Shown: positions 4,167-18,041, numbered from the stretch's first letter. The stretch: DNA of 64,000 nucleotides from Paramoeba atlantica (GCA_977017575.1 CDRNVI010000043.1:372001-436000), one strand, 5' to 3'. Made by a program: numbers and translations. Notes: a model not told the origin generated them from the sequence alone.

Positions 4167-6983
4167 TTACGACATGAAGACATCCACGTCTGACTTGGCA
4201 GTTGGCTCTGTGCCCCGAAGAAAAGCGTGTTCTAAAAGTTGCTCTACTGTCGCCCTCTTTTCTGAATCTCTTTCAAAGCACTTTAAAAGAAAATCTGCAA
4301 GCAAAGGGTCTAATTCTGTTGGTAAGTTTGGTGGTAAGCCGGATGTTTCAGTAATTTGCTGCATTGCTTGATACAGTGTTGCTGCCTGTCTCCATGGTGG
4401 TCGACCTCCATTGAGCATTTCCACAATTGTACACCCGAAGGACCATACGTCTGAATTGTACGTCCACTTGACTCCATGAAATGCTTCGGGCGCCATCCAA
4501 AGAGGGGTTCCCGTAATCGTCGCAGTTTCGGAACCAGTGACCAATTTTTTGGCCGTTCCAAAATCAGCAACTTTCAGAACGCCTGTTTTGGAAATCAGTA
4601 CATTGTCTCCTTTGAGATCACGATGTACAATCTGATGATTATGAAGGTGCTTTAACGCACTCAATATCTGGGTAGCGTAGCTTTGTAACGTTACTTTACT
4701 GAGGCCACCACTTGGAAGTTTTCGGCACATTTGGCTAAGGCTTCCTCCTTCAGCGTACTCCATCGCAATGGTAATGTCACGTGTGTTGCGATTCAGCTGA
4801 CAACCGTAATACTTGATCAAATTCCTATGTTCGGGAAGTTCCCTCATTAGGTTAACTTCTCTCACAATACTCTGTGCTTCCTTGAGAGAAAGTCGGTCAC
4901 GATGCTTCCCTTTTAGAGGAATGACTTTCAATGCGACAACGGTTCCTGTATCTTCTCTAAACGCTTTGAATACTTTACCGTGAGCCCCACGTCCGATGAG
5001 ATGCCCGCGGGTAAACTTCAATGTTGGGCTACTATCTGCGGATTTCGCGGCGATATCCATAAAAATATAATCCGTTGCTGAACGGGAAGTATTGTCAGAG
5101 AATGGTGAAGGACTTGGTGCTGATGACGGACTTCCTTGTGGTGACTCTGTGTCAAGATCTGATGAAAACGAGAATGATTCCTGTTGAGTTGGTGTTGAAG
5201 GACTTGAGAGTGCTCCGTTGTTCACAGTATATGCGCTTTCTTCCTCCGGCGCTGGTAGCAGAGATTGCAATGCTGGAGGTTTTTCGGATCTTACGGAACC
5301 CATTGAAGAAATAATGTCTTCTGAAGATGTAGTGAATGCCTCACACTGGCTTGATTTTTTCTTACGATAAAGCAATATACTCATTAATGCAGCGTTCAGA
5401 AGAAAACAGACGCTTATCCATACAAGAAAAATACGTTTGTAATGATGCCTGTGAAGGAAAGGGGCCAATTGTCTTGCCGTCGGAGGTAATTCTATGCTAA
5501 AAATAAGGACCGATTCCGAAGGCTGTAGTTCCGTACTGCTATGAGCAAATAATTTGTTGCGACCCTTTTTGCTTACAGTCACCGTTGGCTGCTCAAAGAC
5601 ATCTGAAGATTCCTTTGAAACGCAGTGTTTACCCCCCACAACAGCAATAGTATATTCATTCAGTCGGGCATTCGGTAGATTTCCAGAGTATACCGCGTGC
5701 ATGGAAGAGCCCGCAAGCTGAAAATTATTACTCTCCAGTGATCCAAGTAAAAGATTCAAGTTCACAACTCGCCAACCACAGCTACGACAACTGAGGTCCA
5801 AAACCTCTGCAAAAGGAACTATATTGCCGTCTTCGCCGAACCCACCAAAAACAAACAAGTAATTTTTGCCCTTTGTTCCGTCACCAACTACTATAACAGA
5901 ATGGTGACTCCTTGCGTAATGAAGCGGAGCGTATGGCTTCCATCCTAATTGCTCCTTAAAAAACCAAACTTTGTTCGTAACTGCACCGTTTGATATGAGT
6001 TGACCCCCAATCACAAACAAGATCCGTAAGGCATACAATGCGATTCGATGTCCACGTAAGCTCTCTGGCAAAAGAGCAACGACCTTTTTCTGATAAAATA
6101 TTGGCCAATGAACAGTATCGTACTCAACAATTTCCCTGGAACAGTTCACACTATCCAATACTTCCCCTGAGAAACCTTGTCTTGGTGATAACACTGCAGG
6201 TTCAATAATTTTGCTATGCTTGCGAATCCGTGAAGAATCTTTACTTGTACTTATATCCTGCTGCCTTGAGTGTCCGACAGAATGTTGAGCATTTATTTCT
6301 TTGCGTACATTATGTATCCTCACGCCGCCTCCGACCCAGATATAATCCCCAAGTTGAACAATCGTACTTTCACTCACTGGTGGAACGTTCGTTCCCCACG
6401 GCTCTCCATGCTCAGGAGGGGCATACCAATGAGGTTCTAACCACTGCTCAGTGGCCAAATCGAACACATCCGTATGTTCTGGAATATGGCCTCGTGGACC
6501 CACGCCACCTAACAATATGGCTACGTGATTGTGTATAACTGCACCAGAAGCATTCACTCTAGGAGTATGATACAACCCGGTATGATCCCCTGGGAGAGAA
6601 AACCACTTACGTTTCTCCATATCATATTTGAAATTTCTGGTGGCCCAAGTGCCATTCGAATACGTACCCCCGAAAACATAAAGACCAGATGCATACAGAA
6701 GAGTTACTGAGCCCAATCGTGGACCGTCAGGAAGAGTTTCGGTATGCGGCTTTCCGACAAGTGCGATTGAGATGTTCAATTCGGTTAAAGAACACGAAAT
6801 ATTTTTTCTGACCATAGAGTCCGCTGAGTAAACTCTATGCATATTTTCTTGGCGGAAAAACGGATCCAAGTAGGTACGACCCAAAGTCAAACCCAATAAG
6901 ACGCTCCCCACGAGAGGCAGTAATATTGTTTGAAGACAATACTGACGTTCTGACAGAGTGCTGCATACTCTATTAACCGACAT
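4167..6983 (-). CDS. Receptor-like kinase 1: N-terminal hydrophobic segment, Kelch repeats, TM helix, STE11/MAP3K-type Ser/Thr kinase
   Basis: Kelch GG motifs (LYVFGG, ILLGG, IWVGGG, LFVIGG, LFVFGG) with spaced W; TM IFLVWISVCFLLNAALMSILLY followed by RKKK; kinase motifs GRGAHGKV, ALK, HRDLKGDN, DFG, GTPLWMAPE, DVWSFGC. Confidence 0.9.
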   Translation of the reverse strand: MSVNRVCSTLSERQYCLQTILLPLVGSVLLGLTLGRTYLDPFFRQENMHRVYSADSMVRKNISCSLTELNISIALVGKPHTETLPDGPRLGSVTLLYASGLYVFGGTYSNGTWATRNFKYDMEKRKWFSLPGDHTGLYHTPRVNASGAVIHNHVAILLGGVGPRGHIPEHTDVFDLATEQWLEPHWYAPPEHGEPWGTNVPPVSESTIVQLGDYIWVGGGVRIHNVRKEINAQHSVGHSRQQDISTSKDSSRIRKHSKIIEPAVLSPRQGFSGEVLDSVNCSREIVEYDTVHWPIFYQKKVVALLPESLRGHRIALYALRILFVIGGQLISNGAVTNKVWFFKEQLGWKPYAPLHYARSHHSVIVVGDGTKGKNYLFVFGGFGEDGNIVPFAEVLDLSCRSCGWRVVNLNLLLGSLESNNFQLAGSSMHAVYSGNLPNARLNEYTIAVVGGKHCVSKESSDVFEQPTVTVSKKGRNKLFAHSSTELQPSESVLIFSIELPPTARQLAPFLHRHHYKRIFLVWISVCFLLNAALMSILLYRKKKSSQCEAFTTSSEDIISSMGSVRSEKPPALQSLLPAPEEESAYTVNNGALSSPSTPTQQESFSFSSDLDTESPQGSPSSAPSPSPFSDNTSRSATDYIFMDIAAKSADSSPTLKFTRGHLIGRGAHGKVFKAFREDTGTVVALKVIPLKGKHRDRLSLKEAQSIVREVNLMRELPEHRNLIKYYGCQLNRNTRDITIAMEYAEGGSLSQMCRKLPSGGLSKVTLQSYATQILSALKHLHNHQIVHRDLKGDNVLISKTGVLKVADFGTAKKLVTGSETATITGTPLWMAPEAFHGVKWTYNSDVWSFGCTIVEMLNGGRPPWRQAATLYQAMQQITETSGLPPNLPTELDPLLADFLLKCFERDSEKRATVEQLLEHAFLRGTEPTAKSDVDVFMS

Positions 6984-7076
6984 TTATGTACATAGAGACT
7001 AAAATTGAAGAGATTTCTTTAATCGTGGACAGCAAAAGTCACGAATAAAAGCTTGTCGCAAAGGGCTTTTTACATG

Positions 7077-7269
7077 CAGGGGGTGCACGAAAATATTGAG
7101 GATAAAATTCGTAAATGTTGGCCAATTTTGGAAGGTAGCATCGCATTCGAGAGCTCTCATAGAGTTACATGTGATATTATTACCTATCGCGCATTCTTGG
7201 GATTGTTTCCTAATTTTTTCCAATTGTTGAACCTGAATTCTGGTTGCCACAAAGTGCCATACACCCCTG
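7077..7269. mobile_element. Degraded MITE-like relic with CAGGGG(G)TG / CACCCCTG ends
   Basis: cagggggtg at 7077 and cacccctg at 7262-7269 form a short imperfect inverted repeat of Tc1/mariner style; no coding capacity. Confidence 0.35.
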
Positions 7270-7325
7270 TTCCACTTTTTTGCCCGCAATTGATTGAGCA
7301 CACCAGATGAGCTTTTCGAATTTTC

Positions 7326-7434
7326 TTTTTTAGGCTCTTCGTTATACGCGGTGGTCGCTTTCAACTTAGAAGTCACTCATGCTGCGCGCTTCGCGTTGAA
7401 AACTACCACCGCGTATGACGAAGAGCCTAAAAAA
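7326..7434. repeat. Long inverted repeat (40-bp arms, 37/40 matched, 29-bp spacer)
   Basis: The arms are 7326-7365 and 7395-7434; a diverged third copy lies at 8160-8203. Confidence 0.9.
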
Positions 7435-7871
7435 AAAATTGGCTTCGAAAGCAGGAGAAACCGGAAGGATTGGAGCCAAAATTAGCCAATTTTAGGGTAG
7501 AAATAGGGTTATTTTTGCGTATTTTTGTTCTCAGAGCACTAAATTCGACTTTTTTTAAATCACTCGTACGCATGAATGTAAGGCTACAGAACGTAATCGG
7601 TATAGAATTCGAGTCCAACGACACCATTCTTCCGGGACAAAAATACCCCTTTGGGACCGAAAAATACTTTTTGGCATTTTTTAGTCAAATTTGGGCCATT
7701 TTGGTAGGCGCACCACGGCTCATAGAAGGGGTATCTCGTGAAACCAACTGCGGAGAAAGCTAGTATATGTCCCGAACTCTCAAAATACAATAGGGGAAAC
7801 AGTTTTAAAAAAGTATTTTTTTTGCCATTTTTTTCGCCAAGTTGAATTTTTTTTGCAAAAGAATTTGGGTA

Positions 7872-8484
7872 ACCGGCACTATAAATGTAGGTTAAAATCC
7901 ATTTTTTTCTGATGATTTTTTTCCGCTCGAAAAAACTTTTACATGACTTTTTAAAACGTTTCCACTCATACTCATGTCGTTCCAACTTATATTTCAATGC
8001 TTGGAATACTCAATGGACCGCCCAGGATATACTACATTGGCCTACTACATTGGTCTACTTGGTATTGGTGACCTGTAAAAAGGATAAGGTGCGCTCCCAG
8101 ACGCTCCCAGACACTCCCATCCAGTTTGAACCCTCTTGGAAGCCACCACGGCTACCCCCTTCGCGTTGAGAACTGCTTCCGCGTTTAACGCAAAGACTAA
8201 AAAGGAAAAAATTGCGAAACGATCCAGAATAATCCAACTTTTGGTACAAATACTCGATTCTCCCCATATTTCGTATTCTCCCCATATTTCGGACGTTTTT
8301 TGGGGTCTTACCATTAGAGGTAGGGGGCACATCTGATCGAAAAAACGTGTGGTCTGGTAAGTAAGCTAAAAAAATAAATAAGAAAAGAGATTAACGAAAG
8401 ATCAAAAACTTTTTCCTGAGTCCTTTTGGGCATGATTGTTCAAACAAATTTTACTTGTTTTCAACCTACATTTATAGTGCCGGT
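7872..8484. repeat. Inverted pair of 22-bp perfect repeats with TTAA-like borders
   Basis: accggcactataaatgtaggtt (7872-7893) versus aacctacatttatagtgccggt (8463-8484); weaker similarity continues for about 40 bp outward. Confidence 0.8.
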
Positions 8485-8846
8485 GAACCAAAAATTTTTC
8501 CGAAAAAATCCGAACTTGTCGGACCCGTCCTGCGCATACGTGGGGGGGTCACCCCCGGGTAGGGGGGTGGAAAATACGTACCAGGACCCTGGCTACCCGT
8601 TCTGCGCTTTTGTTTCGAAAAATAATTTTTTCAAAAAAAAATTCGTGCGGTATGCCCCCCATGGACCCCCAAGGGTCCGATTTTTTTTTGAAATTTTTTG
8701 GACCACCGGAGCCCCTTTTATATATTTTTCTTCTATTATATTACTGTGTTCCTCTTATATTTTCACTGTTTTTGTTCACTTTTTTTTCAATAATCGAGGG
8801 TAAAGCGGTAGTTATACAACCACCGCAATTTTTTCAGCAAAGTACG

Positions 8847-9207
8847 TACTGTCCCCCCCGTACGTAAGAGTCCGCCGATTTTAGGCAATTGGACTCCTAA
8901 GTGGGGGGGTCACAATTTTTCGGACTCTTAAGTGGGAGGGGGCCGCATTTTTTCCTAAAATTTCAATATGGCCGGTTCCGTTTTTTTTTCCTCTATTTTT
9001 TCTATTTTTGTACCATCAAGTACAAATCGCTTGGAAATATTAAAAACGCAATGGGCAGACAAAAAACAAAATCAAAGAAAATAGAAAAAAATCAAAGAAA
9101 AAAAAATCTGGCGGCGCTTCGCGCCGCAGGCAGCCCGAGGTTCCGTCAAAAAGGACTCTTAAGTAGGGGGAGTACCCCGCGGACTCTTAAGTAGGGGGGG
9201 GGCAGTA
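8847..9207. mobile_element. MITE-like element with 29-bp TIRs (26/29) including TA at both ends
   Basis: tactgtcccccccgtacgtaagagtccgc (8847-8875) versus gcggactcttaagtagggggggggcagta (9179-9207). The motif ggactc(t/c)taagt(a/g)ggg is repeated at 8891, 8922, 9153 and 9181. Confidence 0.8.
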
Positions 9208-9395
9208 AAAGATTCGCGAGATCGTGTAAAAAATGAGTTTTTCACCCCTTGTTTCAGCTGTGGTAGCTAAGCAAAAAAGGTTCGTTTTTTCCACGTTTTT
9301 CAGTAACAAATTGTGTTTTTTTGTGTTTTTTTAGGTTATTTTACCAGAATTTATGTATACTTCTATCTTCCATTTCTCTTTTGAAATGTCCTGAT

Positions 9396-10064
9396 TACTG
9401 TTACCCCCCCTTACTTAGCCCCCACTTTTTGGCCCAAAACCCATACTTTGTGGTGAAGTAAGGGGGGTGAATAAGCGACTCAAGGTTCGATCAATTTATA
9501 GTTCTCTCGGAAATCCTCAAATTATTGAAGTACACTATGCTATCGACATTGAGCATAATTCCCTTTTCTTGAGTGTGCAAGCCAGACTCTTCACAGCTAG
9601 ATTTGGAAGATTCGAGGCCGACGTCCTCTACCTGTTTTCGTTAGTACAAGACGGCATCAACGTGCTGCTACTAACCCGTTGTGTCGACGAATCGTACGGT
9701 GAACCCATGACAATCTTCAAAAGTCATCATTCCTGCAGCTACGTAGCCTTCCTGTAGCCGTTAACGTTCCCCCCGGAACGTTAAACCGGACTGTGGTTTA
9801 AAATCCCGGTATGACGGCGTCGTCACCAAGAAAGTTGCACCACAAACCTTTGTGCATCGATCTTTGTGTGCCATCTGTGTCCCCCCTTGAAGACCACTGG
9901 GCGTGGCTCTGCCTCGCCTTACAACGATGCAACGGTCGGTTGCAGTGCACCCCTCCGGCTGTGTAAAGAGGTGGTAAGTTGCCTGGAGAAAAATCTGACA
10001 CCCCCCCTTACTTCACCACACGTCCAGTGACTAACTGTGGTGAAGTAAGGGGGGAGGCGAAGTA
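9396..10064. mobile_element. Putative non-autonomous element bounded by hairpinned repeats
   Basis: The motif tgtggtgaagtaagggggg occurs at 9449 and 10036, with an inverted copy at 10002-10020 and a partial inverted copy at 9403-9415. The left end tactg..ccccccc(t)tactt resembles the end of the 8847 element. Confidence 0.55.
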
Positions 10065-10187
10065 AGTAAGGTTCAAATTTACTTCAGTCTAACCGTTCAC
10101 GCATACCCAACGCTTGGCAGTGTCCTCGTGACACCCAAACGCCTTGGCGTCTGCAGGAAAAGAATCCGTTTCCTTAATCATAGTCTA

Positions 10188-10219
10188 ACTAGTATTTTAG
10201 TACGTACTAAAATACTAGT
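10188..10219. repeat. Perfect 32-bp palindrome
   Basis: actagtattttagtacgtactaaaatactagt; a related 14-bp palindrome atagtacgtactat lies at 10238-10251. Confidence 0.95.
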
Positions 10220-10830
10220 AATCGACTAGTACGTAATATAGTACGTACTATGAGATACTACTTTTTTGGAATGGAAGGATTTTTTTTCTCAGGTATTGCG
10301 GCACTCCTATTTGACAAAACAAATCGTTACTTTTGATCGAAACAGACGAGACAACCTATTTTGCATGGGCATAGTACAGTATAGAGGACTTTTGCGAGTA
10401 TTTTCACGGTCGACGCTCGGAGCTCTGCTTTTAGAGAGGGATGGGGATAACTTAAAGAGGAAAAACTGCTGCTTGAGAACTGCTGATGAGGGATTATAAC
10501 TGCTGATGATGAGGAACCATCGGAAAAATAATTAAGTTAATTATTTTTTACCAAAAGTATCCTACGAGAGGATCTCAGTTGCCCATGAGGTGCATAAATT
10601 AATCTAATTCGTTTCTGCACCTTTCGTTGTCAGAAAAAGCCCTCTTCTGGGGCATAGTGCTGTAGTAATGTCGAGCTAAATTCAGTCACTAAATTCACAA
10701 AAATAATCAGTTTTTTCTAAAACCCACAAATGTTTGCGTGTTAAAAAATCAAGTTCTTTTTCGAATTTTTGATACTTCCCTCAAAAGGGGCTGTGGGTAC
10801 TGTTTTTTCCCAAAAAATATTTTTCTTGTC

Positions 10831-11944
10831 ATTTCCAGTGCACCACTTTTCTTAAAAACTGTATTCTCATATCCAATGCACCATCAATTATTTAAAGAAG
10901 TATTATTTTATAATATCCTTCGGATCTACACTACAAATCCGCCATTATTCAAGACTTAGTCTTTACGATCGTAATCGTATTCATGCACTCTTCGCATCTG
11001 GCGAGAGTCGGCGAAGCATAGCTCGCATAATTGGCAAAAGTCACAGCACTGTTTGTCGCGAGTTGGCGCGTAATGCAAGAAGGGGTCAGTGCTATGAGGG
11101 GATGAGGGCACATACGCCTCTTGTGTAAAAGGGTAAAGCCTCACAAGATACAAGACCTTTTGCAAGAGGAAGTCAGCTCTCGACTTCAAAAGAAGCACAG
11201 CCCGAAACAGATTGCAAATACGATCCGGAGCTGTCGTACCGCCTCGACTTCTACCATATATCGCCACATTCGTCGCAACGCGTCCTTGGGCGGCAAGTTG
11301 TACACCCATTTGCGGATCCGGCGAAAGAGGCCATACCGTCGTCGCGCTAGACCTGATCGCAGCGCGATTCCCAACCGAACGCCACTTGAAAATCGACCAG
11401 AAGTAGTCAATAAGCGTCGGCGCTACGGCGATTGGGAAGCAGACTTGGTCGACGGCCGAGGACATACCGGATATATTCTTACCCTGTGCGAGCGTAAGAG
11501 TCGCATCCTTGTTCTTCTCAAGTTGGAATCTAAGAACGCGAAGGAGGTAAGCAAACAAATTGTAGACGGGTTAAAGAACACAGGGTTCGGACGATCACAT
11601 ACGACAACGGAACAGAATTCTGACACCATGAAGAAGTAAACAAAGAATTATAATGCAAGTCTTTCTTTTGCGCTCCGTACTATTCGTGGGAGAAAGGGTC
11701 TGTGGAACATGCAAACGATTTGATCCGACAATTCCATCAGAAAACCGAATTTTTTGAGTATTTGAACCAAAGTGAATTAAACAAAACAGCATTGGAATTG
11801 AGCACTCGTCCTCGGAAATTATTAAAATATCGTTCTCCAATGGATTTTGTGAATGAACTCCTCTACATATGTGCATAAGGCCATAGTTCGTAAATCTTTC
11901 ATGGACTAGTGGTCCAGTTTTTAAAAAAGTGTAGCACTTCTACA
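10831..11944 (+). mobile_element. IS30-family insertion sequence (decayed), about 1.1 kb
   Basis: The left IR agtgcaccacttttcttaaaaactg (10837-10861) matches the reverse complement of the right IR cagtttttaaaaaagtgtagcact (11915-11938). The right outer end reads TGTAGA on the minus strand, as recalled for E. coli IS30. The IRs enclose an IS30 transposase pseudogene. Confidence 0.85.
10937..11878 (+). pseudogene. IS30-family DDE transposase pseudogene
   Basis: Three joined frames. HTH: RHYSRLSLYDRNRIHALFASGESRRSIARIIGKSHSTVCRELARN (10940-11128). Core: ...NRPEVVNKRRRYGDWEADLVDGRGHTGYILTLCERKSR (11121-11584). C-terminus: VRTITYDNGTEF*HHEEVNKEL*CKSFFCAPYYSWEKGSVEHANDLIRQF...STRPRKLLKYRSP (11585-11878). 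D at 11442, D at 11603 and E at 11705 give D-33-E spacing. Frameshifts lie near 11114 and 11583, stops at 11621 and 11651, and ATC occupies the presumed start at 10937. Confidence 0.92.
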
Positions 11945-14900
11945 GATCATACACTGTGCAATCTAAGGTTGCGCTGTACTCCTGTACATCGCTTAGACTA
12001 GAGGAGGTAGGAGTGTGCACAATATGATTGCTGCTGTGTGTTATACTGTCTTGACTGTTTGTGTGAATTTTCGAAGCACTTCCACTGCCTCGCTCAAACT
12101 TTTTGTGACGTGTATGCTCTACAATTGAAGGTAGATTTGTTGACCTCTGTGGACTCCCAGATTCGGGGCGTATTTGAGTTACTGTCAAATCTTGAAAAAT
12201 GTTATATTTTTCAAGATGAGATGATTCTATCCTTTCTGACTTCGTTATGAAGGGATCCATTAAGAGATCATCGACGTCTGGGCGTCGCTCCGGATCACGT
12301 TCGAAACATTTCAAGAGGAAGTTATTCAAAATTGGGGGTAGTGATTTCGAACTAATCGTGGGCGGCAATCCAGTGCTCTGCGTTACCATTGTAATAAAGT
12401 TTGAGAGCGAGTCCGTCGAAGGCCATGGTGCCTCGCCGCTGTTCAACATTTCTACCACTGTGCATCCAACAGACCATACATCGACTTTCGCACTAAGATA
12501 ATCGTTCTTGTTAACGTCTTTTACATAATCTTGTTGCGTAGATTTTGTTGTGAAGTCATTAGTCGGAGTCAATCCCGCGTTCTCAACGACAGCTTTAAAT
12601 TCGGTCTGGTGAGAATATTCCACCATAGATGGATTTTTAGCCTTCAACTCGGAACAAGGCAATAGGTCTTTACCCTTCCACTGCACAAGGAGCTCGGGAG
12701 CAGTCCAAGGCAACGTACCGAAAGCATGCTTTGCAAAAGGATTCGTTGTGTGCTTTTCGTTATATGAACATAGCTGATTGTCCACGGTATGTGTTGCGAA
12801 AATCCTGGCATGGCCAAAATCGGCTAGTTTCAGGGTTCCTCTCGAGCTTAATAGTATATTATCCGCCTTGACATCGCAGTGTGACACCTGGTGCGCATGA
12901 AGGTGGGAAAGTCCCATCAACAGTTGCGTGGTAAATTTCTGTATGACACTAATGTCTAACTGTTGACGTCGGCATAGAGCGCCAAGTGTACCGCCTTCTG
13001 CGAATTCCATAACAATGTGTATCTCTGCTTTTTCGGGAAATATATTACAACCGTAGTATTGTACAATGTTTGGATGAGGTGGAAGCGATTTCATTAATTT
13101 TGTTTCTCTAGCAATTATTGCGATGTCTTCTTGCTGCATTGAATCGTATATAGGCAAGACTTTCATCGCCAAAAGCCCTCCACCGCGTTGGACTGCGGCA
13201 TAAACAATCCCATATGACCCTTGTCCAATTTCAGATGTCAATTTATACTGTAAAGTTGCTCGGTCAGACGTTGGGGTAAGAGGTGAATTTAGATCACCCA
13301 CGTGTTTTTCAAGCTGTTCTGTGAGCGATGCACTCGTATGACATGCAAACGTATCGCTATCGGCTTCGGGCCACGAGGGGCCGAAATTTGGCTCCAAATC
13401 ATGCCCCTCAAAGTTTAAATGAAGTAATGGGCGACGTACCTCCTCTTTTTTAACCTTTTCGGGTCCATTCTTTGTCATATAATGTATACGCAGACTTCTA
13501 TAGATTTCCAGGAAAACAAGACATAGCAATATGCAAATTATGAGACTTGTCCAAAAACGTGCACTTTCGACCAATGCGATCAAACGAAAGCTTTTCGATA
13601 GCCCTTGTGAGCTTATGTGCGTGATATTCGCCCGAAAAATAAGCAACTCTGATATGTACTCCGCCGGGCGGTATCCTCCACTGTATGCAAAATCAAATCT
13701 GCTATAGTTCCCAAAGTCTGTGACGAATGGTACCGTAACTGACGACCATGCTGCCATAAACAATCTTTGGAGTCGATTCCTTGTCTCATACACAGGAAAT
13801 AACTTCGCATTGTGCCTGTTTTTTCGCAAGCAGACAAGATCTATAAATCTCTGAGCTGACATTCTCTGCCATTGAGAAGTTGGTACGCGTAGGTCAAATG
13901 TCTCGATTCCTTCCGCTAGTTTGGGCCGCTCTATTTTCGCATCTTGAATGCCTCCTGCGACGAGAAGAAATTCAATTATTGTTCTCGGAGTTCCTAGTTT
14001 TACTGCTGTGAAGTAAGCTCGTGGTGAATGCATTGAATGCAAAGATACCCAATGCAGCAATGATTTATCGGCTGACAGAGTAGACGTACTTGTTTGCAAT
14101 GTCCTCCTCTGAACCTGAGCTCCGCGACCCACTCCCCCAATCGACAACAACGAGCAATTTGATCCACGAAGTAGTTGATGACCCGTAATTGGCAGTATGC
14201 TTCTTCTTCCGGCTGTTGTCCCGAAAACTCTTTCTTCAGAAAATGTGTCCAAATTAAACGAAAAGTACTTTTCGTCCACTATATTTCGATTATGATCTCC
14301 TCCTATTATGTACAACACCGACGAATTTCCTTTCTCGCTGCATTCCGGTGGAAGGATCACAGTCCCAGGAAAGCTTGGTGCCTTGAATGTACTGCCTCCT
14401 AGACTTCGCATTTTCCAGGAAACCGCAGCTAACCAGCGTAAACTTGGAATATGAAATACATCCACCACATGAACAGCAGGCTCTGAACCATCTCTAGGAT
14501 CGTACGAATGTCCACCTATTATAATAATAATATCGTCTTCGTATTCCTTTCCCAAGCTTCTAACAACGTTATTTCGAGAAGAATTGGTTGAATCTACTTT
14601 ACGTTTGAGTTCGGCTCTGCCATACACTCGGGGGGTGTAATATTGGCTTTCTTTCCTTAGAACTGTCCATTTCTTTGACGTTGTATTATATTGCAACGAT
14701 CGTGAGGAAGGTGCCTTGCTGCCTTGAGATCCTTCTCTTCCACCGAAAATAAACACGGAATCTCTATAATAAACGCTGGAATGTCCGTACCGTGGTCTAG
14801 GTAACGTAGTATATTCGAGAACTCCAATATCCAGTACTGAGCGTTCGGTAAAAAAAGCATTAGCGCACGTTTTATTATTCAATATTTGATTCAGATGGAT

Positions 14901-15080
14901 GCAACGTTTGTTGTCATACGCTATGTGATTTTCTTCAGTATTTAAGAAATTTTTGGTCGTGATATTCGTTGGCATGGTCTCGTTCGAAAACAGAAGCGTG
15001 CGTAATCCTTGATTGAAGGGGTGAAAAAAGGAACAATATAGCAAGACAATTACGGCGCGAAAATGCACGAAGAATGTCAT
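11940..15080 (-). CDS. Receptor-like kinase 2: signal-peptide-like N-terminus, Kelch repeats, TM helix, STE11/MAP3K-type kinase (non-RD)
   Basis: PRPRYGHSSVYYRDSVFIFGG, IIIIGG, LYIIGG, LLSIGG and LLVAGG Kelch motifs; TM FWTSLIICILLCLVFLEIY; kinase motifs GQGSYGIV, AMK, HCDVKADN, DFG, GTLPWTAPE, DVWSVGC. Confidence 0.9.
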   Translation of the reverse strand: MTFFVHFRAVIVLLYCSFFHPFNQGLRTLLFSNETMPTNITTKNFLNTEENHIAYDNKRCIHLNQILNNKTCANAFFTERSVLDIGVLEYTTLPRPRYGHSSVYYRDSVFIFGGREGSQGSKAPSSRSLQYNTTSKKWTVLRKESQYYTPRVYGRAELKRKVDSTNSSRNNVVRSLGKEYEDDIIIIIGGHSYDPRDGSEPAVHVVDVFHIPSLRWLAAVSWKMRSLGGSTFKAPSFPGTVILPPECSEKGNSSVLYIIGGDHNRNIVDEKYFSFNLDTFSEERVFGTTAGRRSILPITGHQLLRGSNCSLLSIGGVGRGAQVQRRTLQTSTSTLSADKSLLHWVSLHSMHSPRAYFTAVKLGTPRTIIEFLLVAGGIQDAKIERPKLAEGIETFDLRVPTSQWQRMSAQRFIDLVCLRKNRHNAKLFPVYETRNRLQRLFMAAWSSVTVPFVTDFGNYSRFDFAYSGGYRPAEYISELLIFRANITHISSQGLSKSFRLIALVESARFWTSLIICILLCLVFLEIYRSLRIHYMTKNGPEKVKKEEVRRPLLHLNFEGHDLEPNFGPSWPEADSDTFACHTSASLTEQLEKHVGDLNSPLTPTSDRATLQYKLTSEIGQGSYGIVYAAVQRGGGLLAMKVLPIYDSMQQEDIAIIARETKLMKSLPPHPNIVQYYGCNIFPEKAEIHIVMEFAEGGTLGALCRRQQLDISVIQKFTTQLLMGLSHLHAHQVSHCDVKADNILLSSRGTLKLADFGHARIFATHTVDNQLCSYNEKHTTNPFAKHAFGTLPWTAPELLVQWKGKDLLPCSELKAKNPSMVEYSHQTEFKAVVENAGLTPTNDFTTKSTQQDYVKDVNKNDYLSAKVDVWSVGCTVVEMLNSGEAPWPSTDSLSNFITMVTQSTGLPPTISSKSLPPILNNFLLKCFERDPERRPDVDDLLMDPFITKSERIESSHLEKYNIFQDLTVTQIRPESGSPQRSTNLPSIVEHTRHKKFERGSGSASKIHTNSQDSITHSSNHIVHTPTSSSLSDVQEYSATLDCTVYDL

Positions 15081-16610: not shown

Positions 16611-18041
16611 CTATGCCTTCAATACGCGGTCGTAAAATTCGCCTTTCAGTTTGTTATCTATTTTGTTCAACATTTCTTTTGGAAACGTGCGAAGCAAAGA
16701 CCAGCATAAATCTAAACTCACAAAGATATCTCTCGTTTCATCGTATTCCTGGCGGAGGAACATGTTTTCGTATTTTTCAAGGAACTGAAGATGGAGGAGA
16801 TCCTCTGTGCTCAGCGCCTCTTCGCCAACTACAGCTTTCATAGCAAGAATATCCCTTGCGATGGCATAAGCCGCATACATTTGATTTGACACAGCACCGT
16901 GGTCTTTTCGTGTCACACCGTCCCCGATTGCGTGTTTCATCAAGCGTGACAAAGATGGCAGAATATTTATGGGGGGATATATCTGACGGTTGTGCAGCTG
17001 ACGATCGATATAAATCTGCCCTTCCGTGATATATCCCGTAAGATCGGGAATCGGATGCGTAATATCGTCATTGGGCATAGTTACAATTGGAATCTGCGTA
17101 ATCGAGCCTGGTTTCCCCGCTACCCGTCCCGCTCGCTCGTAGAGACTAGCGAGGTCGGTGTACATATACCCCGGATAACCACGTCGCCCTGGGACCTCTT
17201 CTCGCGCTGCGCTAATTTCCCGTAATGCATCGGCGTACGAGCTCATATCAGTAAGAATCACCAGCACGTGCTTGCCACAGTCGTAGGCCAGGTACTCTGC
17301 ACACGTTAAAGCGAGGCGTGGGGTGATAATACGCTCAATGGTGGGGTCATTGGCCAAGTTAAGAAATACAACTGTGCGTTCCATTGCACCGTTCTCTTCG
17401 AATTCGCGCCGAAAAAATCGTGCGGCCTCTGCCGTGACACCCATGGCGGCGAATACGATACAGAAACTCGAACTGTTGTCAGCAGCTCCTCCCCTCCTTA
17501 CCAACCCGGCCTGTCGTACGATCTGTGCGGCCAGTTCGTTATGAGGCAATCCAGCACCACTAAACAGGGGAATCTTCTGTCCACGAGAAACGGATGTCAT
17601 GACGTCAATGGAGCTGATACCAGTTTGAATCATTTCTTCGGGATACACACGCGCACTTGGGTTAATGGGCATCCCTGTAATATCCCGATAAAACTCGGGG
17701 AGAACAGGGGGTCCGTCATCGATAGGAATTCCTGAGCCATTGAAGATACGACCCAACATGTCTTCAGTGACCCCGAACTCCATAATTTTCCCGGTAAACT
17801 CGCATGTACTGTCTCGTGCATCAATACCTGCCGTTCCCTCAAATACTTGCACAACCGCTTTGCTGCCGTCAACCTCAAGTACTTGTCCACGACGAGTTGA
17901 ACCATCGGCGAGACGTAAATTCACGATCTCAGCATAGCACGGGCTTCGTACCTTTTCGAGAATAACTAAGGGCCCATTCACGGCGTTTATAGTCCTGTAC
18001 TCCAGCCGAGGCTCTGGAGTCTCCGCCTTCGTGGATGTCAT
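16611..18041 (-). CDS. VMA2: V-type proton ATPase subunit B
   Basis: [76 protein letters not shown]. Confidence 0.98.

What the first reader, a model, noticed from the sequence alone, without database searches (positions are those of the whole stretch)
4167..15080. Tandem pair of receptor-like kinases with Kelch-propeller ectodomains fused to STE11/MAP3K kinases
Seen: both ORFs (938 and 1046 aa) have an N-terminal hydrophobic segment, several Kelch GG repeats with many N-x-S/T sequons, one clear TM helix followed by basic residues, and a cytoplasmic MAP3K-type kinase. They are strongly diverged from each other. Known: Kelch propellers are usually cytosolic, kinetoplastids lack classical receptor kinases, and a few TM-bearing STE kinases are known (e.g. 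T. brucei RDK1). Inference: a lineage-specific surface-sensor family wired directly to a MAPK cascade. If the organism is an endosymbiont, these are candidate host-sensing receptors.
Basis: partly seen in the sequence, partly recalled or inferred. Interest (0 to 1): 0.7.

Follow-up and report, generated by a model that had tools for sequence, protein, structure and literature searches.

The report
Kelch-ectodomain membrane MAP3K-like kinase pair
Two neighbouring genes in a relative of the amoeba endosymbiont Perkinsela encode single-pass membrane kinases with a Kelch propeller predicted outside the cytosol and a MAP3K-like kinase inside; the family is small and undescribed, but both halves of the design already have precedents in trypanosomes.

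Summary
Both ORFs (938 and 1046 aa, minus strand) are real. Each has an N-terminal hydrophobic signal, about six Kelch GG…W repeats, one transmembrane helix followed by basic residues, and an intact kinase closest to MAP3K2 and ASK1.

An exhaustive profile search of 1.84 billion proteins placed only five family members at the top. They are gene A, gene B, Perkinsela sp. CCAP 1560/4 KNH00558.1 ("protein kinase"), its unnamed Perkinsela-like relatives, and the free-living prokinetoplastid Apiculatamorpha spiralis. A is the Perkinsela orthologue. B is a fast-evolving non-RD paralogue found only here.

- **Precedents exist.** T. brucei Tb927.5.3150 has signal peptide, Kelch, TM and an orphan kinase, and the tagged protein sits in the ER (Jensen 2021). 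RDK1 is a membrane-associated STE11-like kinase.
- **Membrane anchoring is common.** About a third of the nearest STE kinases, several of them euglenozoan, also carry a TM helix.
- **Host sensing is weakened.** A free-living relative has the gene.
- **Untested.** Surface location, ligand and MAPK wiring.

In the only public contig with this locus, B carries two frameshifts, so it may be dispensable. The propeller models have low confidence (pLDDT 44–45). The scan also noted a similar tandem pair on another piece of this genome (s1-392814).

The parts
4167..6983 (-). Gene A: 938-aa type-I membrane Kelch-ectodomain STE11-like kinase, orthologue of Perkinsela KNH00558.1
   Evidence: ORF. Pfam Pkinase plus Kelch. 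The kinase tree groups A with the Perkinsela clade at 96/91. Collinear full-length alignment.
6879..6983 (-). A residues 1-35: N-terminal signal sequence or signal anchor (hydrophobic core 16-34, LTLG then RT)
   Evidence: Kyte-Doolittle peak of 1.98-2.39. An N-terminal hydrophobic segment is present in all six family members. No SignalP was available.
5427..6878 (-). A residues 36-519: ectodomain with six GG…W Kelch units (GG at 105, 159, 218, 326, 380, 450), a roughly 90-aa insert in blade 3 and a C-terminal stalk; 5 sequons
   Evidence: Pfam. Profile search against PDB Kelch domains, E=1e-23. AF2 model with pLDDT 44; its Foldseek matches are all six-blade Kelch propellers, TM-score by target 0.55-0.62.
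5370..5426 (-). A residues 520-538: transmembrane helix followed by YRKKK (positive-inside)
   Evidence: Hydropathy 2.37; net charge of the next 15 residues +3.
5013..5369 (-). A residues 539-657: Ser/Pro-rich juxtamembrane linker, read as probably disordered
   Evidence: Seen directly in the sequence. No Pfam hit.
4218..5012 (-). A residues 658-922: STE11-like kinase domain with GxGxxG, VALK, HRDLKGDN, DFG and GTPLWMAPE all intact
   Evidence: Pfam Pkinase 8.8e-63. Best PDB match MAP3K2 at 2.4e-47, then ASK1. Invariant columns.
6984..11939 (.). 5-kb spacer between the two genes with no long intact coding ORF; it holds a truncated IS30-family transposase relic at 11121-11639(+)
   Evidence: ORF list. 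NCBIfam NF033563, 1.3e-34, 120 bits, profile positions 34-195 of 267. No third kinase copy.
11940..15080 (-). Gene B: 1046-aa divergent paralogue with the same architecture, found only in this organism
   Evidence: ORF. Pfam. In the tree it is sister to A plus Perkinsela at 93/61, on a long branch of 1.4. In the public contig it is split by two 1-bp insertions.
15009..15080 (-). B residues 1-24: N-terminal signal sequence (hydrophobic core AVIVLLYCSFF)
   Evidence: Hydropathy 1.81-2.27.
13557..15008 (-). B residues 25-508: Kelch ectodomain with 9 N-x-S/T sequons (enriched)
   Evidence: Pfam Kelch_6, Kelch_4, Kelch_3 and Kelch_1 above cut-off. The GG/W columns are invariant across the family. 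AF2 model with pLDDT 44.7; Foldseek matches KEAP1, KLHL3 and designed six-blade Kelch propellers, TM-score by target 0.60-0.65, rmsd about 4.8 Å. Sequon test.
13500..13556 (-). B residues 509-527: transmembrane helix followed by RSLRIH
   Evidence: Hydropathy 2.35; net charge of the next 15 residues +3.
12225..13247 (-). B residues 612-952: STE11-like kinase domain, non-RD (HCD in place of HRD), with a long insert in the activation segment and about 60 aa more between APE and DVWS
   Evidence: Pfam reports Pkinase in two stretches. Alignment. Best PDB match MAP3K2 at 2.6e-31, then ASK1.

Best explanation
The two genes are paralogous members of a small, so far undescribed family of single-pass (type I) membrane kinases. 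In the results listed here the family occurs only in early-branching kinetoplastids (Prokinetoplastina).

Proposed mechanism:
1. An N-terminal signal sequence sends a roughly 480-residue domain into the ER lumen, and from there possibly to the cell surface. That domain is a six-blade Kelch propeller plus a stalk.
2. One TM helix with a basic stop-transfer flank leaves a disordered Ser/Pro-rich linker and a catalytically intact STE11/MAP3K-like kinase in the cytosol.
3. The propeller most likely binds a protein or glycan partner. Partner-driven clustering would switch on the kinase, which would then phosphorylate a MAP2K or other cytosolic substrates.

Gene A is the orthologue of the single Perkinsela gene (KNH00558.1). 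Gene B is a rapidly evolving non-RD duplicate that exists only in this organism. B is either a co-receptor-like partner of A or a copy on the way to being lost.

Shown: domain content, domain order, conserved hydrophobic segments, catalytic residues, family distribution and the A-Perkinsela relationship.
Inferred: topology, glycosylation, cellular location, ligand and substrate.
For: - ORFs and Pfam domains.
- Hydrophobic N-terminus plus a single TM helix with a positively charged C-side flank: the segments are present in all six members, and the flank is positive in five of six (Perkinsela P0174 net 0).
- GG/W Kelch columns invariant across the family.
- PDB profile hits to Kelch propellers, E=1e-23.
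- Both AF2 ectodomain models superpose on whole six-blade Kelch domains, TM-score by target 0.55-0.65.
- Sequon asymmetry: pooled P=0.0012, driven by B.
- MAP3K2 and then ASK1 are the best solved relatives of both kinases. All catalytic motifs are conserved.
- In the exhaustive HMMER search, family members score 750-1226 bits, against 660 bits or less for multi-kinase or kinase-only proteins.
- Names: Perkinsela sp. CCAP 1560/4 and Apiculatamorpha spiralis.
- Kinase tree: A plus Perkinsela at 96/91.
- Single copy in the three Perkinsela-type loci.
Against: - No signal-peptide or topology predictor could be run. The N-terminal segment of A starts 16 residues in and could be an anchor, although the topology would be the same either way.
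- The structure models have low confidence (mean pLDDT 44-45, pTM 0.46-0.50, alignment of only 6 sequences), so propeller closure is not proven.
- Sequon enrichment is not significant for A taken alone.
- The only experimentally studied analogue, Tb927.5.3150, is mainly ER-localised when tagged. A surface role is therefore not the default.
- B is frameshifted twice in the public contig.
Confidence: 0.7

Rival explanations
1. The proteins are ER or endomembrane residents whose Kelch propeller faces the lumen. They would report on a lumenal state such as glycoprotein load, folding or lipid/cargo status, rather than sensing anything outside the cell.
For: Five of seven tagged T. brucei TM kinases co-localise with BiP, including the Kelch-bearing Tb927.5.3150 (PMC8519429). 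The predicted topology is equally compatible with an ER location.
Against: No member has a C-terminal di-lysine ER-retrieval motif (C-termini read). The T. brucei data come from overexpressed C-terminally tagged proteins, and that kinase belongs to a different class (orphan). Enriched sequons on B fit any secretory-pathway location.
Confidence: 0.3
2. This is the first reader's reading: the pair are host-sensing receptors that an endosymbiont uses to read the amoeba cytoplasm and feed a MAPK cascade.
For: A groups with the Perkinsela clade. Other agents' notes call this organism a Perkinsela relative inside a marine amoeba (I did not check this independently). The gene is retained in the Perkinsela sp. 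CCAP 1560/4 genome. It is duplicated in this organism.
Against: The free-living predator Apiculatamorpha spiralis has a canonical member, so the family predates endosymbiosis. The three Perkinsela-type loci examined each carry a single copy, with no tandem partner in the 10-kb flanks. The extra copy B is frameshifted in the other available version of the locus. There is no ligand, location or expression evidence.
Confidence: 0.12
3. Gene B is a decaying duplicate, a pseudogene in the making, and only A is functional. On this view the 'pair' has no joint function.
For: B has the longest branch in the family (1.4 against 0.43 for A). It has HCD in place of HRD and two large kinase inserts. In the public contig ctg4014l it carries two non-compensating 1-bp insertions, at codons 28 and 273, and 3 of its 7 substitutions are nonsynonymous. 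A and the V-ATPase B gene differ only by synonymous changes, and the sequenced parts of the other coding genes carry no indels.
Against: In the window B is one uninterrupted 1046-codon ORF with every catalytic residue, the TM helix and the signal sequence intact. It shows a significant sequon bias of the kind expected under selection for a glycosylated ectodomain. The contig indels could be assembly errors.
Confidence: 0.3
4. The family is simply the prokinetoplastid orthologue of trypanosomatid Tb927.5.3150, whose kinase diverged until it was classed as 'orphan'. Nothing here would then be a new family.
For: The outline is the same: signal sequence, Kelch repeats, a TM segment around residue 440-520, then an ePK domain. 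T. brucei also has a second orphan kinase gene immediately adjacent (Tb927.5.3160), which recalls a tandem pair.
Against: Tb927.5.3150 is 1654 aa with two predicted TM segments, and its kinase is classed unique/orphan rather than STE. No protein of that size and layout appeared among the 150 best hits of the full-length profile search. The neighbouring genes examined show no sign of the link. The T. brucei sequence could not be fetched, so this was not tested directly.
Confidence: 0.3

Closest known systems
Perkinsela sp. CCAP 1560/4 KNH00558.1 ('protein kinase', 912 aa) and its unnamed relatives P0003/P0318 and P0004
   Same: Collinear over the full length: signal sequence, Kelch ectodomain, one TM helix, STE11-like kinase. 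The kinase is up to 52% identical to A. A and this clade are sisters at 96/91.
   Different: They are single-copy and lie in a different gene neighbourhood. They were never described: the main text of the Perkinsela genome paper mentions neither kinases nor Kelch. B has no counterpart there.
Apiculatamorpha spiralis (PhF-6) EP00759_P041767, 777 aa
   Same: Same architecture, with six textbook Kelch blades. The kinase is 47% identical to A.
   Different: The ectodomain is compact (about 330 aa) and lacks the blade-3 insert and the stalk. The organism is free-living (PMC7859406).
Trypanosoma brucei Tb927.5.3150 (Jensen et al. 2021, PMC8519429)
   Same: Signal peptide, Kelch repeats, TM segment and ePK domain in the same order. 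It is the only Kelch-bearing kinase in the T. brucei kinome.
   Different: It is 178 kDa (1654 aa) with two TMHMM-predicted TM segments. Its kinase is classed unique/orphan, not STE. It is ER-localised when tagged. No loss of fitness was seen on RNAi. The L. major orthologue lacks the Kelch part. Homology to the window's family was not testable here.
T. brucei RDK1 (Tb927.11.14070) and MEKK1 (Tb927.2.2720)
   Same: Both are membrane kinases of T. brucei. RDK1 is a membrane-associated STE11-like kinase proposed to start a MAPK cascade from a membrane (PMC3894213).
   Different: They have two or three TM segments. Their sensor domains are bacterial-type or cyclase-like, or absent. Neither has a Kelch propeller or a cleavable signal sequence.
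Single-pass STE-type receptor-like kinases of diplonemids, euglenids and uncultured protists (for example Diplonema japonicum P0009, Namystynia P0244, metagenomic P0195)
   Same: These are the nearest kinase domains outside the family. 48 of 148 have a strong TM helix upstream of the kinase, usually followed by basic residues.
   Different: Their ectodomains differ: Cys-rich, PBP-like or unannotated, and none is Kelch.
Attractin-type extracellular Kelch propellers (Pfam PF24981)
   Same: Gene A's ectodomain scores above the gathering cut-off for the Pfam family named Attractin/LZTR1 beta-propeller (54.1 bits against 50). Attractin's ectodomain contains a Kelch propeller (my own knowledge, not tested), so there is a precedent for Kelch outside the cytosol.
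   Different: Attractin has no kinase and sits in a multi-domain metazoan ectodomain. The similarity is at the level of the repeat family only.

Membership tests
Kelch-repeat beta-propeller | Pfam Kelch models scored above their gathering cut-offs | tested here: met
   A: PF24681 63.5 bits against 50, PF24981 54.1 against 50, Kelch_4 40.7 against 21.6. B: Kelch_6 30.4 against 25.3, Kelch_4 30.2, Kelch_3 30.3, Kelch_1 22.2 against 20.1.
Kelch-repeat beta-propeller | Five to seven tandem units of about 50 residues with a GG doublet and a conserved Trp, in register | tested here: met
   Six GG doublets in A and seven in B. Four GG…W pairs are invariant across six family members. P0002 has six canonical blades.
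Kelch-repeat beta-propeller | Closed propeller fold | tested here: inconclusive
   AF2 mean pLDDT is 44.0 for A and 44.7 for B. Foldseek still aligns both models to entire six-blade Kelch domains, TM-score by target 0.55-0.65, E 7e-9 to 2e-12.
STE11 / MAP3K protein kinases | Complete ePK catalytic core (G-loop, VAIK Lys, alphaC Glu, HxD…N, DFG, APE) | tested here: met
   All are invariant in alignment A1. B has HCD rather than HRD, so it is a non-RD kinase, but it keeps Asp, Lys and Asn.
STE11 / MAP3K protein kinases | Closest similarity to STE11-family kinases rather than other groups | tested here: met
   PDB search for A: MAP3K2 165 bits, ASK1 145, MST 143, PAK 141. For B: MAP3K2 112, ASK1 109, PAK2 101. 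Database neighbours are ASK/MAP3K15 proteins. No tree against a reference kinome was made.
STE11 / MAP3K protein kinases | Phosphorylates a MAP2K (STE7) activation loop | not testable with these tools
   Needs a biochemical assay.
Single-pass type I receptor kinase | N-terminal signal sequence | tested here: inconclusive
   Hydrophobic N-termini in all six members, with small residues at plausible cleavage sites. No SignalP or DeepTMHMM was available.
Single-pass type I receptor kinase | One TM helix between ectodomain and kinase, with positive-inside flank | tested here: met
   A 520-538 then YRKKK; B 509-527 then RSLR. Five of six members carry a net positive charge after the helix.
Single-pass type I receptor kinase | Ectodomain passes through the secretory pathway (N-glycosylation bias) | tested here: inconclusive
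   Significant for B (P=0.013 for enrichment, P=0.016 for cytoplasmic depletion) but not for A (P=0.16).
Single-pass type I receptor kinase | Plasma-membrane location and ligand-dependent activation | not testable with these tools
   The nearest experimental analogue is in the ER.
Tb927.5.3150 orthologue group | Signal sequence, Kelch, TM, ePK in that order | tested here: met
   Compared with S2 Table of PMC8519429.
Tb927.5.3150 orthologue group | Kinase of the trypanosomatid 'unique/orphan' class; about 1650 aa with two TM segments | tested here: not met
   The window's kinases are STE11-like, 938 and 1046 aa long, with one TM helix. Tb927.5.3150 is 178 kDa, with a 4962-nt ORF inferred from the primer name, and is classed unique/orphan.
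Tb927.5.3150 orthologue group | Specific sequence affinity or shared synteny | tested here: inconclusive
   No such protein appeared among the 150 best profile hits. The T. brucei sequence could not be fetched.
Prokinetoplastid Kelch-TM-STE11 family (Perkinsela KNH00558.1 type) | Collinear full-length match and a kinase-domain clade | tested here: met
   Family members score 750-1226 bits in single full-length stretches. A plus Perkinsela at 96/91, B joining at 93/61, and the whole family including PhF-6 at 57/94.

The most novel reading that the evidence does not exclude
A and B work as a receptor and co-receptor pair on the surface of a eukaryotic endosymbiont. A is an RD kinase and B a non-RD kinase with a heavily glycosylated propeller. 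Their Kelch propellers would bind host-amoeba molecules and drive a MAP kinase cascade that couples symbiont growth to the host. This would be the first receptor-kinase system described for a eukaryote-in-eukaryote endosymbiosis.
Probability: 0.08. Interest if true: 0.8.

Novelty: new variant of a known kind. Interest (0 to 1): 0.4.

Why it matters
Kinetoplastids are usually said to have few or no receptor kinases. This family shows that early-branching kinetoplastids keep a clean receptor-style design of signal sequence, propeller, one TM helix and a MAP3K-like kinase.

Together with the many TM-anchored STE kinases nearest to it, several of them from diplonemids and euglenids, it suggests that modular 'receptor MAP3Ks' were part of the ancestral euglenozoan toolkit and were largely lost or remodelled in trypanosomatids.

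It also gives a concrete candidate for how a Perkinsela-type endosymbiont could perceive its surroundings, and a comparison point for the unexplained T. brucei Kelch kinase Tb927.5.3150. The value is comparative and hypothesis-generating. Nothing here shows a new mechanism.

Tried and rejected
1. Word-based ectodomain search and word-based profile search. The first found only the query. The second found unrelated kinases and did not even recover the family. Both were uninformative.
2. I first assumed Tb927.5.3150 was the orthologue. I dropped this as the default after its size (1654 aa), its two TM segments and its orphan kinase class emerged. A 1654-aa gene next to the Perkinsela-like homologue turned out not to be a kinase, so the matching length was a coincidence.
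3. The hits with two matched stretches in the profile search that I checked (8 of them) are dual-kinase proteins, not further Kelch-kinase fusions.
4. Synteny between the window and the Perkinsela-type loci: none.
5. A third copy or pseudogene in the 5-kb spacer: none.
6. AF2 with a 6-sequence alignment gave low-confidence models for both ectodomains.
No expression, spliced-leader site or read-level check of the B frameshifts was possible, and read laying was not used.
8. The protein-atlas feature search gave only generic Kelch clusters below 0.9.
9. The T. cruzi and T. conorhini 831-834-aa kinases (P0010, P0012) are cytosolic STE kinases without TM or Kelch, not orthologues.

Full report
**What is there**

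The window reads like a kinetoplastid polycistron. Of 31 ORFs of 200 aa or more, all but one lie on the minus strand. They encode housekeeping proteins such as V-ATPase subunit B, a proteasome subunit, a Nup35-type protein, NIF3 and a pseudouridine synthase.

Two of these ORFs are the finding: gene A at 4167-6983 (938 aa) and gene B at 11940-15080 (1046 aa). A 5-kb stretch without long coding ORFs separates them. It carries a truncated IS30-family transposase relic (NF033563, 1.3e-34). The window holds no third copy.

**Anatomy**

Both proteins score for Pkinase (8.8e-63 and 1.6e-49) and for Kelch families above the Pfam cut-offs in their N-terminal halves.

| Feature | Gene A | Gene B |
|---|---|---|
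| N-terminal hydrophobic segment | residues 16-34 | residues 1-19 |
| Internal TM helix | 520-538, then YRKKK | 509-527, then RSLR |
| GG doublets in the ectodomain | 6 | 7 |
| Sequons, ectodomain / total | 5 / 6 | 9 / 9 |

Against composition-preserving shuffles, the sequon bias is significant for B only. B's ectodomain has 9 sequons against 4.1 expected (P=0.013), and its cytoplasmic part has 0 against 3.8 (P=0.016). A has 5 against 2.95 (P=0.16). The pooled Fisher test gives P=0.0012.

The kinase domains keep every catalytic motif. A has HRDLKGDN and GTPLWMAPE. B has HCD, which makes it a non-RD kinase. B also has a long activation-segment insert and a further insert of about 60 residues. 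For both, the best solved relatives are MAP3K2, then ASK1, then the STE20-type kinases.

A and B share 35-44% identity in the kinase and about a quarter in the ectodomain. The one qualification is that 'many sequons' is a statistical signal only for B.

**Is the N-terminal half a propeller?**

A profile of six ectodomains hits solved Kelch propellers at E=1e-23, including designed SAKe proteins, LZTR1, KLHL2 and KLHDC10. The GG and Trp columns of four blades are invariant in the family. The Apiculatamorpha member shows six textbook blades.

AlphaFold2 had only six sequences to work with and gave low-confidence all-beta models (mean pLDDT 44.0 and 44.7, pTM 0.46 and 0.50). Foldseek nevertheless aligns both models to whole six-blade Kelch domains such as NS1-BP, KEAP1, KLHL3 and KLHL12. 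The TM-score normalised by target is 0.55-0.65, and rmsd is about 4.8 Å for B. I take a six-blade Kelch propeller as likely. A would carry a roughly 90-residue insert in blade 3 and a stalk before the membrane. Propeller closure is not demonstrated.

**Relatives**

A word-based search with A's kinase region found three proteins combining Kelch and kinase at 45-47% identity. The next hits were ordinary STE11/ASK kinases.

An exhaustive profile search of 1.84 billion representatives put five family-level proteins at the top: P0003, A, P0002, P0173 and P0174, at 750-1226 bits and almost all matched full-length. The next scores (660 bits or less) belong to proteins with several kinase domains or a kinase only.

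Exact look-ups identified the members:
- P0174 is Perkinsela sp. CCAP 1560/4 KNH00558.1, annotated only as 'protein kinase'.
- P0002 is from Apiculatamorpha spiralis (PhF-6), a free-living prokinetoplastid (PMC7859406).
- P0173 is a truncated gene call of B itself.
- P0003/P0318 and P0004 come from unnamed ENA assemblies. Their loci share gene order with the Perkinsela locus, so they are Perkinsela-like organisms.

All six proteins have the N-terminal hydrophobic segment and the single TM helix. Each Perkinsela-type locus carries one copy. The tandem pair is specific to the window's organism, and its gene neighbourhood is different.

In a kinase-domain tree, A is sister to the Perkinsela clade (96/91). 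B joins below that on a long branch (93/61, length 1.4 against 0.43 for A). PhF-6 comes next (57/94). So A is the orthologue. B is either an older paralogue lost elsewhere or a fast-evolving local duplicate.

**What is already known**

Jensen et al. 2021 (PMC8519429) list ten T. brucei kinases with TM segments. One of them, Tb927.5.3150, has a signal peptide, two Kelch/Kelch-like domains, TM segments and an ePK domain. The V5-tagged protein co-localises mainly with the ER marker BiP, with some posterior puncta.

That protein differs in several ways:
- It is 178 kDa. The cloning primer name implies a 4962-nt ORF (1654 aa).
- It has predicted TM segments at 442-464 and 607-629.
- Its kinase is classed as 'unique' (Parsons 2005) or 'Orphan', with no loss of fitness on RNAi (Jones 2014).

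It was not among the 150 best profile hits, and I could not fetch its sequence. Whether it is a very diverged orthologue remains open; I put this at about 0.3.

Membrane-associated STE11-like kinases are also known. RDK1 has been proposed to start a MAPK cascade from a membrane.

Of the 148 nearest STE kinases in the library, 48 have a strong TM helix upstream of the kinase, usually followed by basic residues. Of the ten I looked up by name, five come from diplonemids or a euglenid and five from unnamed metagenomic or ENA contigs. The ectodomains of the ten I scanned against Pfam are unannotated or, in one case, PBP-like. The 'receptor MAP3K' layout is therefore common among the nearest relatives, several of them euglenozoan. 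The Kelch ectodomain is the prokinetoplastid version.

The main text of the Perkinsela genome paper mentions neither kinases nor Kelch. No paper in the library describes this family.

**How it probably works**

The most economical reading is a type I membrane protein. The propeller would sit in the secretory-pathway lumen or outside the cell, and the active MAP3K-like kinase would sit in the cytosol. Partner-induced clustering would activate it.

Only the domain content, the conserved hydrophobic segments and the catalytic residues are shown. The topology, glycosylation, location, ligand and substrate are inferred.

ER residence is a serious rival because of the T. brucei precedent. On the other side, no family member carries a C-terminal di-lysine retrieval motif (C-termini).

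The host-sensing idea is weakened because the free-living Apiculatamorpha has the gene and the obligate endosymbiont Perkinsela has just one copy.

**An unexpected point about B**

The window is not identical to the only public contig that holds the locus, ENA ERZ24900291 ctg4014l. Over 20.3 kb the two differ by 25 substitutions and 6 single-base indels.

- The three differences in A and the two in the V-ATPase gene are all synonymous.
- B has seven substitutions, three of them nonsynonymous (A75T, E179K, M639V).
- The contig carries two extra G residues inside B, at codons 28 and 273. Neither lies in a long homopolymer.
- As a result the public gene calls split B into a 240-aa Kelch piece and a 770-aa TM-kinase piece.

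Only synonymous changes appear in A and the V-ATPase B gene, and no indel falls in any other coding sequence of the compared stretch. That pattern looks like real allelic or strain divergence. B may therefore be broken in one allele and dispensable. Alternatively the contig has two errors. In the window B is a single intact ORF with all functional motifs.

The scan also holds a first-reader note of a similar tandem pair on another piece of this genome (s1-392814). I could not tell whether that is the allelic contig or a second locus.

**Limits**

No read-level or expression check was made, and read laying was not used.
- No signal-peptide or topology predictor was available.
- The profile search lists only 150 proteins. 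A distant member with a weak kinase match would not be seen.

**Verdict**

This is a real, conserved and undescribed prokinetoplastid family that combines two features already known separately in trypanosomes: a Kelch-bearing TM kinase and membrane STE11-like kinases. I file it as a new variant of a known kind, with moderate interest.

Noticed in passing
window 2942-23250 against L006 (ENA ERZ24900291 ctg4014l 21952-42264): The window differs from the only public contig with this locus by 25 substitutions and 6 one-base indels (99.85% identity). Changes in A and the V-ATPase B gene are all synonymous, which points to a second haplotype or strain rather than sequencing noise.
   Followed up: partly
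window 14264 and 14999 (B codons 273 and 28): The public contig has an extra G at each site, so B is frameshifted twice there and was called as two genes (240 aa plus the 770-aa P0173, whose TTG start is read as M). The window copy is intact.
   Followed up: partly
window 11121-11639 (+): A 172-aa ORF in the A-B spacer matches the IS30-family transposase model NF033563 (1.3e-34, 120 bits, profile positions 34-195 of 267). It is a truncated relic of a bacterial-type insertion sequence inside a kinetoplastid-type gene array. Pfam gave no hit for the same ORF.
   Followed up: partly
window 6984-11939: A 5-kb stretch without long coding ORFs interrupts an otherwise tightly packed minus-strand gene array, exactly between the two paralogues.
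   Followed up: no
P0195, P0009, P0244, P0177 and 44 others: About a third of the closest STE-type kinases in the 1.84-billion-protein library have a single strong TM helix upstream of the kinase. Of ten checked by name, five are from diplonemids or a euglenid and five from unnamed metagenomic or ENA contigs. One (P0195) has a borderline periplasmic-binding-protein-like ectodomain. This looks like a broad, little-described class of receptor-style MAP3K-like kinases.
   Followed up: partly
P0145 (ENA, 1281 aa): An unrelated eukaryotic protein has two Kelch propellers, a SAM domain and a kinase. It is a Kelch-kinase fusion with a different layout and no membrane-receptor architecture.
   Followed up: no
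T. brucei Tb927.5.3150 / Tb927.5.3160 (literature): The Kelch-bearing TM kinase of T. brucei sits next to another 'orphan' kinase gene, that is, a tandem kinase pair. Whether this mirrors the A/B pair was not testable.
   Followed up: no
L004/L005 5286-6020 and window 16611-18041: A V-ATPase subunit gene lies a few kb upstream of the Kelch kinase both in Perkinsela (subunit D) and in the window (subunit B). The subunits differ, so this is probably coincidence.
   Followed up: no
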